Below are positions 4,101 to 35,197 of a stretch of DNA of 64,000 nucleotides, piece by piece; positions within the stretch are counted from its first letter, which is position 1, and every line of letters begins with the position of its first letter. Source of the DNA: Pelomyxa schiedti (lineage: Eukaryota; Protista; Evosea); assembly GCA_020536535.1 (NCBI GenBank), contig JAHLWZ010000796.1, positions 91,120 through 155,119 on the forward strand, given 5' to 3'. The notes under the pieces are model-generated. The model saw only the letters and a list, made by a program, of their open reading frames with translations, was not told the DNA's origin and searched no databases. The position numbers were made by a program, and so were the translations under genes.

Positions 4101-7100
4101 TTACATTACTTGGACCGCTGGGAATACACTTCGTGAAACTGCAACTACTAAGAAAATGTAATAGAAGTTGTTCCTCCAAACCTGCTGGTAAGGGAAGATG
4201 AATTTTCTGCTCCGTTGAAAACCACCACTCTCCAGTACCACAAGCCCTCAGATAAGGTATCTGGCACTAGCCAAGATGTGGAAGTAGGTTGCAATATTTT
4301 CATCAAAGATGCATCACTGAAGAGAATGCCGAGGTTTGAGGCCATAAATATAAATATTGAGGGTGATCCCTGTTGAGGGCCGCAAGGAGTTCCCAGAACG
4401 GGATCAGCTGTGCGCCATGTAAGAGTAATTGGAGCCACGGCAATAGAGGAAGCGTTTGGCAAAATTAAAACGGGTGTACTTGTTTGTTTGAGGAATAATT
4501 AAGGAAATTACGCAAAGGAACCTTGGAGAGACGGCAATGCACACTTCAAAGGCTCCATTAGTTCTATTGTTTGCATAACTGCCTAGTATTCCGTTATCTG
4601 CTCGTACATTCCAGTTGTATTTCCCAGCTTGGAGTAGTGCAGTATATCTGAAAAATATTTATTGGAGAACAACGCTAGAATAAGGTGCCTGGTTTCAGGT
4701 ACAGTGAACCAATATTCAGTCCGGGGAGACAATAGTAAAATATAAATGAAGTAGGAGGAAGACTCCCCACAGGCGTTTCCATTTGCGGTGGTCCATTGGA
4801 AGAAGACTGTACCATTGTAGGAGGTTACATCTACAAAATTGGTTAATTCTCATAGGGAAGTTCAGGAAGTTAATGCTACCAGGGAAATTGATGGAAAGCT
4901 GTTCAGCACTAGGAAGGCAGACCGAAAAATTGCTCTTGGCAAAAGCTGATTTATCATCCTTTTTAAGCAGAAGGTACCAAGAATATGTTTCTCCATCCAG
5001 AAAAGAGTAATCTTGAGAGCGCATCACAAAAGTTGATTGCGTTGAAGGCAGGTGTTGCACCAAGTTGAACGACTTCCCTGTGACATTTAGCACAAATTCC
5101 AATTCTTCATTACAGGATTTTCCCCCTTTGCAAGATTGAGAAGGATTAAAAGTTTCTGTGACGTACAAGTTGCATTCCACCAAAGGGAGACATTCGAGAC
5201 AAATATTTGAAATGGGGATAGTATTGGTGTAACTGGTGATTCTGGATAACAAAGTGCAAAAGTTCGGCTACTCGATAGAGTAGTTGCATTTCCATTGAAA
5301 GATTCAACCCACCAGGTCCAATTTCCTTCAGCTTCATAGGGAGTTGTGACCTCGGCAGCTTCGTTTCCAAGAACTGAGATAAACAGTGTGCCGTTGAGGT
5401 ACACTTGATAGACACCAGGGAAGGAGGAGTTCTTACAGTATGTACCAAAACTATTTATGTTGTAAATGTCTAGCCAATGTGCTACTTGGAAGAGCGATGG
5501 AAAGTTCTACCTTGCTGGCTCCCATTGAAGCAGTGTATTATTACCTCTTATAAGAGCTCCGGGAAGAGGATAAAGAAGAGAAACGGGCTACATTTCACTC
5601 AGAATTGCTTATAAAATTACCAAGAGCTCACCTCAGGAGGACTATTTGTGCAGTCATTACTTACAAATTGTCTAACAGAAGAACTTGCACGCAGATTTCC
5701 ATTAAAAGCCTCTACTTTCCATGATAGAGTTCCAGAGAGTGATGTGAGATTATAAGAGTAATAAAGGGCTCCCGTTGTTTGCCCTATTGGGGCCATGGTT
5801 GTGGAGCTGTTTCCTTGGAGAAGGTGAAACATAGGCAGATAGAAAATATGTACCAAGATATATCGTAAAATTAGATACTAAAGTGGTGCAAGGAATTCCC
5901 CAATCACTGATTGTCCACTCAAATGTCACTTCAGGTGTGACAACAGTCGCATGGTTTGCTGGAGTTGAAAGCTCTATCCCGGAAGGAGCTTCTGGAACGC
6001 ATACCTCCCAGGAAATATTAACAGTTGTTGCACCTCCGTCTATCAGAAAACTAAGTATGTAGAAAGAGGAAACAAACTTGAAAGCCCATTGCTTGTGGTT
6101 ATCCACCAAGAGTATAAACCCGCTTCATTCAAGTTCACTAGGAGAGAAGTAGACGGATGATTCACTGTCGAAGAAACAATAATTTTCCCAGATGAACTTG
6201 CGACAAATACAGTGTATGTTTTCACTGTGCTAATTGAGGTTAGTATTGTTGATTCTGGGAAATGTGTAAACCTCTCGCATGCTTGGCCCCAATCCTCAAC
6301 TGAGTCCCAGAGAAACAGTCTGAATGAATCAGAAGTTGGTTACAAGATATTGTTACCTTGATGATGACGAATTGGAATCATTCGAGCATGGAATCATTGA
6401 AGATATATTTGGAGTAGATGGCACTGTGCTTTCACATACGAAAAATGTGGCACTTGAAGAGGAACTTGTATAGAATCCATTGAACGACTATTTTGCATGT
6501 GGACAACATGTTGTCATTTGTACAATTACCCCTCCCTCCCCAATGTGGTTGTTTCCTTGGATAAATACTTTGACAAGCCAAGTGTGATAGCCAGGAGAGA
6601 CTGTAGTGGTTATCTCTGTTTCAGTACTATTACTGATATTCGTGTCATTTACAAAAAGCTCGAAAAGTTGAGTAGTCACTCCCGCACACTGAGTACCCCA
6701 AGTATTTTGGTATGACCAATCCTTACCCCAAGGTCAACGAACAAGTTTCATAAGAATCGTCCTACCCAGGAAAAAGTGATTACAAGTCCAAGATTCAAAA
6801 ATCTTTGTGTATCTGCTGGCGATACAATGGCGGCGGATGACGGGGCTGCTGCAGTGCATACTATTTTTATTAGAAATAAGAATGTAAATTATTAGGCACA
6901 TACTTGTAAATGTACTGCTCTCTGAAGAAGAAGTGCCCCCGGCGGCAATGGCATCTACATACCATGTATATGTGCCATCACTTAGACCTCCTGGTATAAT
7001 CCAGAAATTCTCGTCTATTGGGTCTGATAAAGTAAGAAGCAGTTATTTTATGAGAAAGTACTTGTGTTCTGTTTATCTGATGTTGATGGGTACCGCCCCA

Positions 7101-32922: not shown

Positions 32923-35197
32923 TCAATTAGACACATCTGTGAGTTCATTGTGGAGATAGCGTTGTTGTTTGACTAGGATGTGGCGTATGGGCTTGTACAG
33001 ATCCCTGTGGTGTTCCTCTGTGTACTCTGACAAGAAGGAACCAACACCAAATCCAGCAACTCCCCCAGAAGATTGGTCAGGCTCAGAGCTCACGGCTGGC
33101 TTGTCAACGCTGAAGTAGCAGTTGGCCTGGCACACATTGGCACAGAACTTGACTGGAATCAGAATCCGGGTGTAGTGTCCTTTCCTTATCTGTCAATCGT
33201 GATGAATTATTCGTTTGTAGTAGTACATTGTATGTGTATTTTTATGTGTGGTGCCAATGTAGTGTTGTAATGGAGTGCAAAATAGTAAGAGCGGAGATAC
33301 CCCTTCATATTCGTCAAGTCCAATTAGGGTTTCATCATCTATTTCCCATAATTCACCTTTAATTCTATGTCCTTGTCCTGAAGCCTTGTTATAATTTTCA
33401 AGTAAGGAGGGACAACCACAACCTGGAAGATTGCCAATCAAGTATGGAACTCCACATTCACCAATAACAAGAGGATAGGGTTTCACTGTGGAAGCAAGAG
33501 AAATATACTTGGATCGACTTAAAAACTTTTTGTTCCAGTGAAATCCCGTTTTGAGTGTGCCATAGACAAATAGCTTGTGTTTTGTTTCTTCTGGCTTTTT
33601 GGGGGTACTTTTCTTGTAGAAGACCATAATTAGCATAATTGCAAATACTGCTACAGACAAAATAGAAACGGTTGTGTGTCCCGATAATACCTGAAGGAGG
33701 GATGAGAATGGAAAGAGAAATGGAACTGATACCCCAAATAATATCACAAGAGCCCCCAAACCTACGGGGATAAAATACTTGACTGAGTTGAGGCCATCAC
33801 TCTTTGGAGATGGAGTTGGAGCTTTGCCTTTCACATGGCAACTGGTGATGGGAGGAGAATTTGGTCCAATATGTGAACTTGTATAAGCTCGGGAATCTTC
33901 AGGTGTCGCCTCTCTTGCACGCTGGTAAAATTCATAATATGGTTCATGCTTAGTTCTCCATCTATCTTCCCAGCAATCAACGAGTTGCTGGAGTCCCGGG
34001 TACTCGGTGCTTCTGAGTCTGAACTCCATTGGCCCATTTTCAAGGACTTCGGAGTCTTTCTAACACATGATGAGCGATACGGGAAGTGAAATGTCACTAC
34101 CTCCCAACGAAACATTGCAGGCCCGGTACACCTCAAGAAAGGTGACAGCTCTACCAAGACAACAGTACCATTGTCCTGAAGATAGCCAAGATCCATAATA
34201 TAGGAGGTCTCTCCTACATGCGTATGAATTTGAGCCCAAAAGTCAAGAAGAGCTTTTTGAATTGTATCACGCATGGCATGCAGGTGAGGGTAAACAGCAT
34301 AGTGATCATATTGAGATATAGCTGTAACCTTCCCATGACGCACAAACAATCGAAATTCGTAATCATATCTGAGGCGAGGTTCCCATCTTCTGAGTGCTAC
34401 CTGCTCAGGCTCGCCAAATTCCAACCAGTCACGTAAATCAACAAACACTCTTTCACTGCTCAATATGAGACTGAGAGCTTCAGCACCAGAAGTGACGCGC
34501 AGCAAGTGTACTCGCGACAGCGCTCCAGCTCGAGTGTTGGCATTATCTGGAAGTTTATCCTTTTCCAGCATTTCCGTGAGAATTGCATTATACTCTGGCA
34601 GAACTCGTTCTCTGTGAAGAGGCTCTGCATCTTTACTATCTTGATACAGTGAATATGCATAAAATTTTTTATGCAAACAAATAAAACCCAAGACTTATCC
34701 CAAAAAAAAAAAAAAAAAAAAAAAAACCATTAGATGGCAAAGTGGTGGACATACACAGAACGCCCACACAAACGCAAAAAAGCTCCGTCTGCCTCGAAGT
34801 TTTCGCGAACTATCTTATCCAAATCCACTTCCAGATTCTTCAGGATGCCAACATCCCTGTCAGTCAGAGGCGGGCCCGGCCTTTGCAAGTACCGCGTCTG
34901 ATAAAAGTGCAGAATGGCAATGGCCTCGCCCCTAGAGAGCGGGTGGAACACCGTATCGAAAGTGAAAGCCCGGAGCGCCGGGTACCACACGTCGATGTCG
35001 AACGCCAAATTTTCCTGCCGCAGGCGGTGCTCGCTGCCGATCATAAGCATTCTGCGGGCTCTCTCGTCTCGCCCCATCGTGTCCCAGTCCGTGCGTTCGT
35101 TAGGCGGATTCCCTTCTGCCTGTTGAATGGCAGACGACATAGAGGCAGTGGCTGGTTGACAAGTTTGTTGTTGGGCCGCTGGTGCGTTGTCTGTCAT
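32923..35197 (-). CDS. Cdc123/R2K-type ATP-grasp ligase fused via hydrophobic helices to a gamma-glutamylamine cyclotransferase (AIG2/GGACT) domain
   Basis: ATP-grasp motifs FLRLCGRS(V)KDA, LSSERVFVDL, LRRW, YEFRLFV...VTAISQY, YIMD, VELSPF and TGPAMFRWE. The intron at ~34045-34086 joins in frame to KDSEVLENGPMEFRLR. Then a hydrophobic segment and LFVYGTLKTG...YPLV...GELWEIDDETLIGLDEYEG. Confidence 0.85.

What the first reader, a model, noticed from the sequence alone, without database searches (positions are those of the whole stretch)
32923..35197. Writer-plus-eraser fusion: Cdc123/R2K ATP-grasp ligase, membrane anchor, gamma-glutamylamine cyclotransferase
Seen: an in-frame splice joins an R2K-type ATP-grasp (RLCGRS.KD, EFRLFV, AISQY, ELSPF) to a two-helix hydrophobic segment and a GGACT domain (FVYGTL, LDEYE). 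Known: Cdc123/R2K ATP-grasps are predicted peptide ligases. GGACT/BtrG-type enzymes remove gamma-glutamyl groups from amines and isopeptides, and ATP-grasp plus cyclotransferase pairs act together in butirosin biosynthesis. Inference: a membrane-tethered reversible gamma-glutamylation/isopeptide tagging system, or protect-deprotect chemistry, in a single polypeptide. I do not know this architecture from characterised proteins.
Basis: partly seen in the sequence, partly recalled or inferred. Interest (0 to 1): 0.8.

Follow-up and report, generated by a model that had tools for sequence, protein, structure and literature searches.

The report
Cdc123-like ATP-grasp fused to GGACT
This amoeba gene really does encode one protein that joins a Cdc123-like ATP-using enzyme domain to a gamma-glutamylamine cyclotransferase, and it belongs to a large, unstudied protist family that gives a testable clue to the chemistry of Cdc123-type enzymes.

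Summary
Window 35197-32923 (minus strand) is one six-exon gene of Pelomyxa schiedti. Its translation is identical to GenBank KAH3757775.1 (638 aa, misnamed "Ras subfamily protein").

The protein has three parts:
- a Cdc123/D123 ATP-grasp fold (Z 21.5 to human Cdc123);
- a 40-residue uncharged hydrophobic hairpin with lysine-rich flanks on both sides;
- a GGACT fold (Z 17.6-18.1 to mammalian GGACT).

The architecture is not unique. More than 100 sequence clusters carry it, from Amoebozoa, Heterolobosea, malawimonads, Holozoa, Foraminifera, stramenopiles and Picozoa. Databases name them only "gamma-glutamylcyclotransferase", and I found no paper describing the fusion.

The catalytic positions of both domains are invariant in 81 aligned members. 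AlphaFold gives pTM 0.81, and 0.90 for a soluble orthologue, which implies packed domains. The membrane hairpin occurs in about 40% of members and is scattered over the tree.

One branch keeps the ATP-grasp residues but has lost the cyclotransferase residues. The make-and-break gamma-glutamyl amide mechanism therefore stays an inference (about 0.4).

The scan noted a like fusion on another piece of this genome (s1-386767).

The parts
32923..35197 (-). Whole coding region, six exons, 638 aa (start ATG at 35197; the stop codon ends at 32923)
   Evidence: The spliced translation is identical to P0233 = KAH3757775.1.
34755..35197 (-). Exon 1: disordered N-terminus (aa 1-40) and the first part of the Cdc123-like fold, up to RLCGRS
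   Evidence: pLDDT is below 50 for residues 1-30.
34636..34754 (-). Intron 1, 119 nt, GT..AG, containing a 25-nt T run (34702-34726)
   Evidence: Splicing yields RLCGRS-VKD, which matches the family motif RLCGRSPKD.
34101..34635 (-). Exon 2: ATP-grasp core, with E241-F-R243, D296 and E310-L-S312
   Evidence: Pfam D123 at 7.9e-19 on this exon alone. It aligns to human Cdc123 8phd_A.
34060..34100 (-). Intron 2, 41 nt, GT..AG
   Evidence: Absent from RNA-seq contig L001. Model.
33733..34059 (-). Exon 3: C-terminal part of the D123 domain, low-complexity linker and first half of the hydrophobic hairpin
   Evidence: The family profile aligns the D123 tail to Cdc123 as far as 'W..D..L'.
33691..33732 (-). 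Intron 3, 42 nt, in frame, inside the first hydrophobic helix
   Evidence: Absent from RNA-seq contig L001 and from KAH3757775.1.
33616..33777 (-). Hydrophobic hairpin, aa 421-460: 40 uncharged residues with an SGHTT turn and lysine-rich flanks on both sides (range includes intron 3)
   Evidence: AlphaFold predicts two helices, 427-437 and 444-459.
33423..33690 (-). Exon 4: second hairpin helix and the start of GGACT (Y478-G-T-L481)
33378..33422 (-). Intron 4, 45 nt, in frame, inside the GGACT domain
   Evidence: Removed in KAH3757775.1. It coincides with a 15-residue gap against mouse GGACT.
33301..33377 (-). Exon 5: GGACT strand and helix ending in LDEYEG, with catalytic E549 at 33306-33304
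   Evidence: E549 aligns with the E of the LDDFE motif of mouse GGACT (1vkb, 2kl2) and, through the family profile, of human GGACT 3jub. That it is the catalytic Glu82 follows from the E82Q entry 3jud. It is invariant in 81 of 81 sequences.
33190..33300 (-). Intron 5, 111 nt, GT..AG
   Evidence: Splicing gives LDEYEG-IRKGHYTR, which matches the family consensus.
32923..33189 (-). Exon 6: rest of GGACT plus a family-specific C-terminal helix (aa 617-628; conserved H620, K624, Q625, Y628), then the stop

Best explanation
Shown: this is a single Pelomyxa schiedti gene for a 638-aa protein. A Cdc123-like (R2K.1) ATP-grasp domain and a gamma-glutamylamine cyclotransferase (GGACT) domain are joined by a linker that holds a short hydrophobic hairpin. 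It belongs to a conserved, eukaryote-wide, uncharacterised family with this two-domain core.

Inferred: the two domains pack into one compact unit on the cytosolic face of a membrane and act on the same gamma-glutamyl amide bond. The ATP-grasp domain would use ATP to activate a carboxylate, most simply the gamma-carboxylate of free L-glutamate, and join it to an amine such as a lysine side chain, a polyamine or another small amine. The GGACT domain would take the gamma-glutamyl group off again as 5-oxoproline, using E549 as the catalytic base. The protein would thus set the steady-state level of a gamma-glutamyl-amine conjugate, much as trypanothione synthetase-amidase balances synthesis and hydrolysis within one chain. 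In P. schiedti the hairpin only localises this unit to a membrane.
For: One gene:
- The six-exon model equals KAH3757775.1.
- An RNA-seq contig spans introns 2 and 3.
- Complete transcriptome ORFs from many species carry both domains.

Domain identity:
- Pfam D123 at 1.4e-18 and GGACT at 5.1e-18.
- VIA Z 21.5 to human Cdc123 (248 residues aligned, rmsd 3.7).
- VIA Z 18.1 and 17.6 to mouse and human GGACT (rmsd 2.0-2.4, 28-30% identity).

Both sites are conserved in 81 members that share about 40% identity with this protein:
- ATP-grasp: E241xR243, D296 and E310 are invariant. R142 and K149 are present in 80 of 81.
- GGACT: Y478GTL481 and E549 are invariant.
- E241xR243, D296 and E310 align to EFR, D233 and D246 of human CDC123 (residue roles from PMC4431377).

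Packed domains: pTM is 0.81 for this protein and 0.90 (pLDDT 92.4) for the soluble 513-aa Mastigamoeba orthologue, where only about 13 residues separate the domains.

Same-side topology:
- There is no N-terminal signal peptide.
- The hydrophobic stretch is 40 uncharged residues with K-rich flanks on both sides.
- The same hairpin design recurs in other members.
- Most members are soluble.

Precedents:
- An ATP-grasp synthetase and an amide-cleaving domain with opposing activities in one chain: trypanothione synthetase-amidase (PMC2427367).
- From my own knowledge, BtrJ and BtrG of butirosin biosynthesis: an ATP-grasp adds a gamma-glutamyl group and a cyclotransferase removes it.
Against: - No R2K.1/Cdc123 protein has a demonstrated ligase product. 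Canonical CDC123 is shown only to bind and hydrolyse ATP and to chaperone eIF2 assembly (PMC12860950).
- The Asn of the ExN metal-binding motif is Ser in 78 of 81 members. The strand-2 Lys appears to be Arg.
- A branch (P0234, P0235, P0237) keeps every ATP-grasp residue but has lost YGTL and the catalytic Glu of GGACT. The GGACT fold can therefore serve without catalysis.
- Making and breaking the same bond in one chain is a futile cycle unless it is regulated, and I see no regulatory element.
- I could not inspect model coordinates, so the distance and facing of the two active sites are unknown.
- The substrate is unknown.
Confidence: 0.4

Rival explanations
1. ATP-gated cyclotransferase. The Cdc123-like domain is not a ligase. 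It is an ATP-binding or ATP-hydrolysing chaperone or switch, as in canonical CDC123, and it holds a client or controls the attached GGACT domain. GGACT alone does chemistry, breaking down gamma-glutamylamines such as the gamma-glutamyl-epsilon-lysine left after proteolysis of cross-linked proteins.
For: - Canonical CDC123 is experimentally an ATPase and assembly chaperone, with no ligase product known (PMC12860950).
- The Asn-to-Ser change in the ExN motif and the Lys-to-Arg change in strand 2 could fit altered chemistry.
- The domains are tightly packed (pTM 0.81 and 0.90).
Against: - The ATP-grasp catalytic constellation is invariant over very wide divergence, including the ExR arginine typical of amide-forming ligases (PMC4431377).
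- The branch with a dead GGACT domain keeps the ATP-grasp residues. The ATP-grasp therefore has a function of its own that does not depend on GGACT catalysis.
Confidence: 0.25
2. Protect-and-deprotect steps of a small-molecule pathway, as in butirosin. The ATP-grasp installs a gamma-glutamyl protecting group on an amine intermediate. Other enzymes then modify the intermediate. The GGACT domain removes the group at the end.
For: - The BtrJ and BtrG precedent (my own knowledge; the gene set is listed in PMC13707489).
- Both active sites are conserved.
Against: - The family is spread over nearly all eukaryotic supergroups with no sign of a shared secondary-metabolite pathway.
- No bacterial relatives were found with the family patterns.
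- A rigid two-domain unit suits direct hand-over better than steps separated by other enzymes.
Confidence: 0.12
3. The ATP-grasp is the only essential catalyst, a ligase of unknown specificity. The GGACT fold serves mainly as a built-in substrate-binding or scaffolding module, and its catalytic residues are retained in most lineages for a secondary editing role.
For: - The degenerate-GGACT branch keeps the fold and the family-specific W487, K490, Y606 and Y615, while losing YGTL and the catalytic Glu.
- The GGCT fold is reused non-enzymatically in another protist: Paulinella crTP part 2 (bioRxiv 10.1101/2025.01.15.633182; PDB 9i09 appears).
Against: - YGTL and E549 are invariant in 81 of 81 mainstream members, which argues for real catalysis in most.
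- The domain is closest to true GGACT over its full length.
Confidence: 0.1
4. Gene-model artefact: two neighbouring genes, an ATP-grasp and a membrane-anchored GGACT, wrongly joined.
For: - RNA evidence in hand stops at 33616, 28 nt before the GGACT fold begins.
- Introns in this genome are tiny and easy to mis-call.
Against: - The D123 C-terminal tail, the linker, the hairpin and the GGACT start are one uninterrupted frame.
- The RNA contig already links the ATP-grasp to the hairpin.
- More than 100 orthologous clusters, many from complete transcriptome ORFs, have the same fusion.
Confidence: 0.02

Closest known systems
Canonical CDC123 (D123, PF07065; R2K.1 ATP-grasp; eIF2 assembly factor; PDB 8phd, 4zgn)
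   Same: - Same fold over about 250-310 residues (Z 21.5).
- EFR, the Asp of strand 4 and the acidic residue of the last strand align.
- The N-terminal 'WYP...PL' segment is weakly alignable.
   Different: - Only 18-22% identity.
- The family motif is RLCGRSPKD, and ELS replaces DFN.
- Two family-specific, near-invariant cysteines.
- Several paralogues occur in one genome.
- It is fused to GGACT.
- Nothing suggests a role with eIF2.
Fast-evolving CDC123 homologues of amoeboid eukaryotes, Legionella and giant viruses (Burroughs, Zhang and Aravind 2015, PMC4431377)
   Same: - Non-canonical R2K.1 members present in several copies in amoebae.
- Predicted there to be peptide-tag ligases.
   Different: - That paper reports no cyclotransferase fusion.
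- The family motifs GEPEQ, ELSPF and YGTLK are absent from the stored part of its alignment file.
- My viral scan found GGACT-only matches.
- The relationship was not tested by a tree.
Mammalian gamma-glutamylamine cyclotransferase GGACT/A2LD1 (PDB 3jub, 3juc, 1vkb)
   Same: - Full-length match at 28-30% identity and rmsd 2.0-2.4.
- The YGTL loop, the catalytic Glu and even the C-terminal 'Y..H...Y.P' segment align.
   Different: - Here it is the C-terminal domain of a larger protein.
- It carries family-specific invariant residues W487 and K490.
- It has an extra conserved C-terminal helix.
Trypanothione synthetase-amidase and glutathionylspermidine synthetase/amidase
   Same: One chain holds an ATP-grasp C:N ligase and a domain that cleaves the same amide, with the balance set by domain arrangement (PMC2427367).
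   Different: - The cleaving domain there is a papain-like CHAP amidase, not a cyclotransferase.
- The ATP-grasp there is not of the R2K clade.
- This is an analogy, not homology of architecture.
BtrJ and BtrG of butirosin biosynthesis
   Same: An ATP-grasp adds a gamma-glutamyl group to an amine and a GGCT-fold enzyme removes it as 5-oxoproline (my own knowledge).
   Different: - They are separate bacterial proteins.
- They depend on a carrier protein.
- They belong to a defined antibiotic gene cluster.

Membership tests
D123 / CDC123 (R2K.1 ATP-grasp) | Match to Pfam PF07065 above the gathering score | tested here: met
   67.6 bits against a cut-off of 24, E 1.4e-18. All 31 of 31 family members match.
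D123 / CDC123 (R2K.1 ATP-grasp) | Cdc123 three-dimensional fold | tested here: met
   AlphaFold model with pLDDT 84. VIA Z 21.5 to 8phv_C, 248 residues aligned, model residues 54-363.
D123 / CDC123 (R2K.1 ATP-grasp) | [quoted passage not shown] | tested here: met
   E241-F-R243 and D296 align to EFR and D233 of human CDC123. Both are invariant in 81 of 81 sequences.
D123 / CDC123 (R2K.1 ATP-grasp) | ExN (DxN in CDC123) at the end of the last strand | tested here: inconclusive
   The acidic residue E310 is invariant. The Asn is Ser in 78 of 81 sequences. PMC4431377 notes that the Asn is sometimes replaced by other polar residues. Two relatives without GGACT keep the Asn.
D123 / CDC123 (R2K.1 ATP-grasp) | The two basic residues that name the R2K clade: a Lys at the end of RAGNYA strand 2 and a Lys/Arg in the following loop | tested here: inconclusive
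   R142 sits at the end of predicted strand 139-143, and K149 lies seven residues later in the loop. The first position is Arg, not Lys. A profile of the N-terminal half did not find Cdc123 in the PDB, so the equivalence rests on motif spacing and predicted structure.
D123 / CDC123 (R2K.1 ATP-grasp) | Orthology with the single-copy eIF2-assembly factor | not tested
   No canonical CDC123 sequences were retrieved, so no tree was built. Low identity and at least three paralogues in P. schiedti (P0233, P0216, P0245) argue against orthology.
GGACT (gamma-glutamylamine cyclotransferase, PF06094) | Match to Pfam PF06094 above the gathering score | tested here: met
   66.2 bits against a cut-off of 22.8, E 5.1e-18.
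GGACT (gamma-glutamylamine cyclotransferase, PF06094) | GGACT fold | tested here: met
   Z 18.1 to 1vkb and Z 17.6 to 3jud, rmsd 2.0-2.4, 131-137 residues aligned.
GGACT (gamma-glutamylamine cyclotransferase, PF06094) | YGTL substrate loop and the catalytic Glu (E82 in the human enzyme) | tested here: met
   Y478-G-T-L481 and E549 align to the mouse motifs, and through the family profile to the human ones. Both are invariant in 81 of 81 sequences.
GGACT (gamma-glutamylamine cyclotransferase, PF06094) | Release of 5-oxoproline from gamma-glutamyl-epsilon-lysine | not testable with these tools
   Needs an enzyme assay.
Bifunctional ATP-grasp synthetase-amidase (TryS / GspSA type) | ATP-grasp ligase and amide-cleaving domain in one chain, acting on the same bond | not testable with these tools
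   The one-chain arrangement of the two domain types is met. A shared substrate is not known. The cleaving domain is from a different superfamily, so this is an analogy only (PMC2427367).

The most novel reading that the evidence does not exclude
The Cdc123-like domain is a true gamma-glutamyl ligase that puts a single gamma-linked glutamate on lysine side chains of proteins, or on polyamines. The fused GGACT domain erases the mark as 5-oxoproline. That would be a reversible modification system conserved across most protist supergroups and lost in animals, fungi and plants. It would also give the first defined ligase chemistry for any R2K.1/Cdc123 enzyme, with bearing on what canonical CDC123 does to eIF2.
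Probability: 0.2. Interest if true: 0.85.

Novelty: new variant of a known kind. Interest (0 to 1): 0.6.

Why it matters
CDC123 is essential in eukaryotes and has an ATP-grasp fold, yet no ligation product has ever been found for it or for any R2K.1 relative. A paralogous family in which this fold is almost always welded to a gamma-glutamylamine cyclotransferase acts as a "Rosetta stone" hint. It suggests the clade's chemistry involves gamma-glutamyl amide bonds.

The family also offers soluble orthologues that are modelled with high confidence. The 513-aa Mastigamoeba protein is one example, and the idea could be tested on it directly. If the idea holds, it adds a reversible modification or metabolite-control system to protist biology and a concrete hypothesis for CDC123 itself.

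If it does not hold, the family is still a widespread, mis-annotated two-domain enzyme that deserves a proper name.

Tried and rejected
- **First gene model.** My four-exon, 667-aa model was replaced by the six-exon, 638-aa model once the GenBank protein and the RNA contig revealed two in-frame mini-introns.
- **NCBIfam.** It gave only weak chance hits to the hydrophobic stretch.
- **N-terminal profile against the PDB.** A profile of the N-terminal 165 residues (A4) did not find Cdc123. I could therefore not make a residue-level alignment of RLCGRSPKD to the CDC123 lysine motif.
- **Bacterial and archaeal genomes.** Family-specific patterns confirmed no relative.
- **Viral contigs.** They gave GGACT-only matches, so there is no operon-type support.
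- **Search with the ATP-grasp half.** It retrieved only this subfamily and no canonical CDC123, so I did not build a tree against canonical CDC123.
- **Burroughs 2015.** The text and the stored supplement mention no cyclotransferase fusion and hold none of the family motifs.
- **Literature.** Five searches found no paper on a D123-GGACT fusion.
- **Single-pass topology with GGACT outside the cell.** Considered and rejected because:
  - both flanks are lysine-rich;
  - the 40-residue stretch has a central polar turn;
  - most relatives are soluble;
  - the domains are predicted to pack together.
- **The "Ras subfamily protein" name.** Rejected, since Pfam finds no Ras domain.
- **Model coordinates.** They are not available to scripts, so the geometry of the interface could not be examined.
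Full report
**What is in the sequence**

The region is eukaryotic and the gene lies on the minus strand. Reading the DNA and joining the open frames at GT..AG sites first gave me a four-exon, 667-aa model.

A database search with the third exon then found a 99%-identical fragment, P0001. Its cluster also holds GenBank KAH3757775.1 of Pelomyxa schiedti (P0233, 638 aa). That protein equals my model except for two more very small in-frame introns.

The six-exon model reproduces it exactly:

| Exon | Window coordinates (minus strand) |
|---|---|
| 1 | 35197-34755 |
| 2 | 34635-34101 |
| 3 | 34059-33733 |
| 4 | 33690-33423 |
| 5 | 33377-33301 |
| 6 | 33189-32923 |

The introns are 119, 41, 42, 45 and 111 nt long.

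**Transcript evidence**

P0001 comes from a 926-nt RNA-seq contig (Logan, SRR23919876) with Nextera adapter sequence at both ends. It aligns to window 34576-33616 with no mismatch and two gaps that sum to 83 nt, which are the 41-nt and 42-nt introns.

One mRNA crosses the junction after the ATP-grasp core and the small intron near 33700.

The contig ends 28 nt before the GGACT fold starts. From there the frame stays open into GGACT with no stop. The 45-nt intron falls exactly where mouse GGACT shows a 15-residue gap against the unspliced exon.

**Domain identity**

- *Sequence.* Pfam on the whole protein gives D123 at 1.4e-18 and GGACT at 5.1e-18, plus weaker R2K_2, R2K_3 and AIG2_2 hits. There is no Ras domain, so the public product name is wrong. 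The best solved relatives by sequence are human Cdc123 and mouse and human GGACT.
- *Structure.* An AlphaFold model built on an 81-sequence family alignment has mean pLDDT 84.1 and pTM 0.81. Foldseek and VIA-align match residues 54-363 to Cdc123 (Z 21.5, 248 residues aligned, rmsd 3.7). They match residues 470-626 to GGACT (Z 18.1 and 17.6, rmsd 2.0-2.4, 28-30% identity).

**Family and distribution**

The fusion is not peculiar to this genome. An exhaustive HMMER search with exon 3 gave 260 cluster representatives at E ≤ 0.001. Dozens of them are 500-730 aa long and carry the ATP-grasp motifs near residues 100 and 200 and YGTL near residue 400.

A profile search listed more than 90 clusters with precomputed D123 plus GGACT domains. 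All 31 members I scanned have both.

Named sources:
- Amoebozoa: Mastigamoeba, Pelomyxa, Physarum, Planoprotostelium, Protostelium, Clastostelium, Luapelamoeba and Balamuthia
- Heterolobosea: Acrasis
- Malawimonads: Gefionella
- Holozoa: Syssomonas
- Foraminifera: Nonionella and Bolivina
- Stramenopiles: Epipyxis, Seminavis and Heterosigma
- Picozoa

The nearest relative of the window protein is the Mastigamoeba one, as the species tree predicts.

No bacterial or archaeal relative was confirmed with the family patterns. Viral contigs gave GGACT-only matches. Where a source names these proteins at all, it calls them "gamma-glutamylcyclotransferase", "AIG2-like" or "hypothetical".

I found no paper on the fusion. 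The 2015 paper that defined the R2K clade does not mention it, and the stored part of its alignment file lacks the family motifs.

**Active sites**

In 81 members, about 40% identical to the window protein with a mean column identity of 20%, the following holds:

| Domain | Position | Conservation |
|---|---|---|
| ATP-grasp | S147, D150, E241, R243, D296, E310 | invariant |
| ATP-grasp | R142, K149 | 80 of 81 |
| GGACT | Y478, G479, T480, L481, E549 | invariant |

- E241xR243, D296 and E310 align to EFR, D233 and D246 of human CDC123. These are catalytic positions listed in PMC4431377.
- E549 aligns with the E of the LDDFE motif of mammalian GGACT. That this is the catalytic Glu82 follows from the E82Q mutant entry 3jud.

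There are two departures from the ATP-grasp template:
- The Asn of ExN is Ser in 78 of 81 sequences.
- The strand-2 Lys seems to be Arg. This equivalence rests on motif spacing and the predicted strand, because a profile of the N-terminal half did not reach Cdc123.

Both changes are fixed across the family. That looks like a maintained, modified site rather than decay.

**Inter-domain relation**

The soluble Mastigamoeba orthologue (513 aa) is modelled with pLDDT 92.4 and pTM 0.90. Only about 13 residues separate the last helix of its ATP-grasp domain from the first GGACT strand.

Such pTM values cannot be reached unless the relative placement of the two domains is confident. I therefore infer a fixed interface. 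I could not see the coordinates.

Several family-specific residues of the GGACT domain stay largely conserved even where GGACT catalysis is lost: W487, K490 and the segment around the extra C-terminal helix (Y606, Y615, H620). This fits a role at that interface.

**The membrane segment**

After removal of the 42-nt intron, the hydrophobic part is 40 uncharged residues (aa 421-460) with a central SGHTT turn. AlphaFold predicts two helices there (427-437 and 444-459). Both flanks are lysine-rich, and the N-terminus has no signal peptide.

By the positive-inside rule this is a hairpin with both domains in the cytosol. That also agrees with the predicted packing and with ATP use.

Across the family, 38 of 108 (window test) or 46 (charge-free-run test) members have such a segment. 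Most of these have either one stretch of 36-45 residues or two stretches of about 20 residues with basic flanks.

On a tree the trait needs at least 14 changes on well-supported branches. The sequence of the segment is not conserved. It is a labile anchor, not part of the core mechanism.

**What argues for caution**

- A branch of abundant environmental sequences (P0234, P0235, P0237) keeps all ATP-grasp residues. It has replaced YGTL and the catalytic Glu of GGACT.
- Two relatives without GGACT (P0245 from P. schiedti and P0248) keep the ordinary ExN.
- Canonical CDC123 is so far shown only to be an ATPase (PMC12860950).

The make-and-break model is therefore a reasoned guess. Its logic has a precedent in trypanothione synthetase-amidase (PMC2427367) and in the butirosin enzymes BtrJ and BtrG. 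It is not shown here.

**Verdict**

- One polypeptide: yes.
- Same-side topology: likely.
- Both sites intact: yes.
- Uncommon architecture: no.
- Characterised: no.
- Writer and eraser roles: unproven.

The scan noted a like fusion on another piece of this genome (s1-386767). I found a second P. schiedti fusion protein (P0216, Pelo_9340) that may be that one.

Noticed in passing
window 34060-34100, 33691-33732, 33378-33422: This genome has very small introns of 41-45 nt. Two of them are in frame and have no stop codon, so ORF reading alone misses them and inflates the protein by 29 residues.
   Followed up: yes
window 34702-34726: A run of 25 T (minus strand) sits inside intron 1.
   Followed up: no
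window 32923-35197 (GenBank KAH3757775.1): The public product name 'Ras subfamily protein' is not supported. Pfam finds only D123/R2K and GGACT/AIG2 domains.
   Followed up: yes
P0216 (Pelo_9340, Pelomyxa schiedti; not in this window): This is a second D123-GGACT paralogue in the same species, also with a hydrophobic linker. Its deposited model lacks the EFR strand and the YGTL loop, probably because mini-introns were mis-called.
   Followed up: partly
P0245 (KAH3766039.1, Pelomyxa schiedti; not in this window) and P0248: These members of the same ATP-grasp subfamily have no GGACT domain and keep the ordinary ExN motif. The GGACT-fused forms have ExS. P0245 also has a long N-terminal extension and may be the protein of scan note s1-396651.
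   Followed up: partly
P0234, P0235, P0237 (environmental sequences): This branch of the family has all ATP-grasp catalytic residues intact but has lost YGTL and the catalytic Glu of the GGACT domain. The fold and family-specific residues are kept.
   Followed up: partly
P0233 residues C144 and C317 (window about 34768-34766 and 34130-34128): Two near-invariant, family-specific cysteines (74 of 81 and 79 of 81) flank the ATP-grasp active-site motifs RLCGRS and CTG. Canonical Cdc123 has a Val in place of C317. Its residue at C144 could not be aligned. A redox switch or a catalytic role is possible but untested.
   Followed up: no
L002 (IMGVR_UViG_3300010352_001565, 222,710-bp viral contig), 5001-5366: A stand-alone GGACT-like gene, 38% identical to residues 475-597, sits on a very large viral contig. 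Eighteen other viral contigs also carry GGACT-only matches.
   Followed up: no
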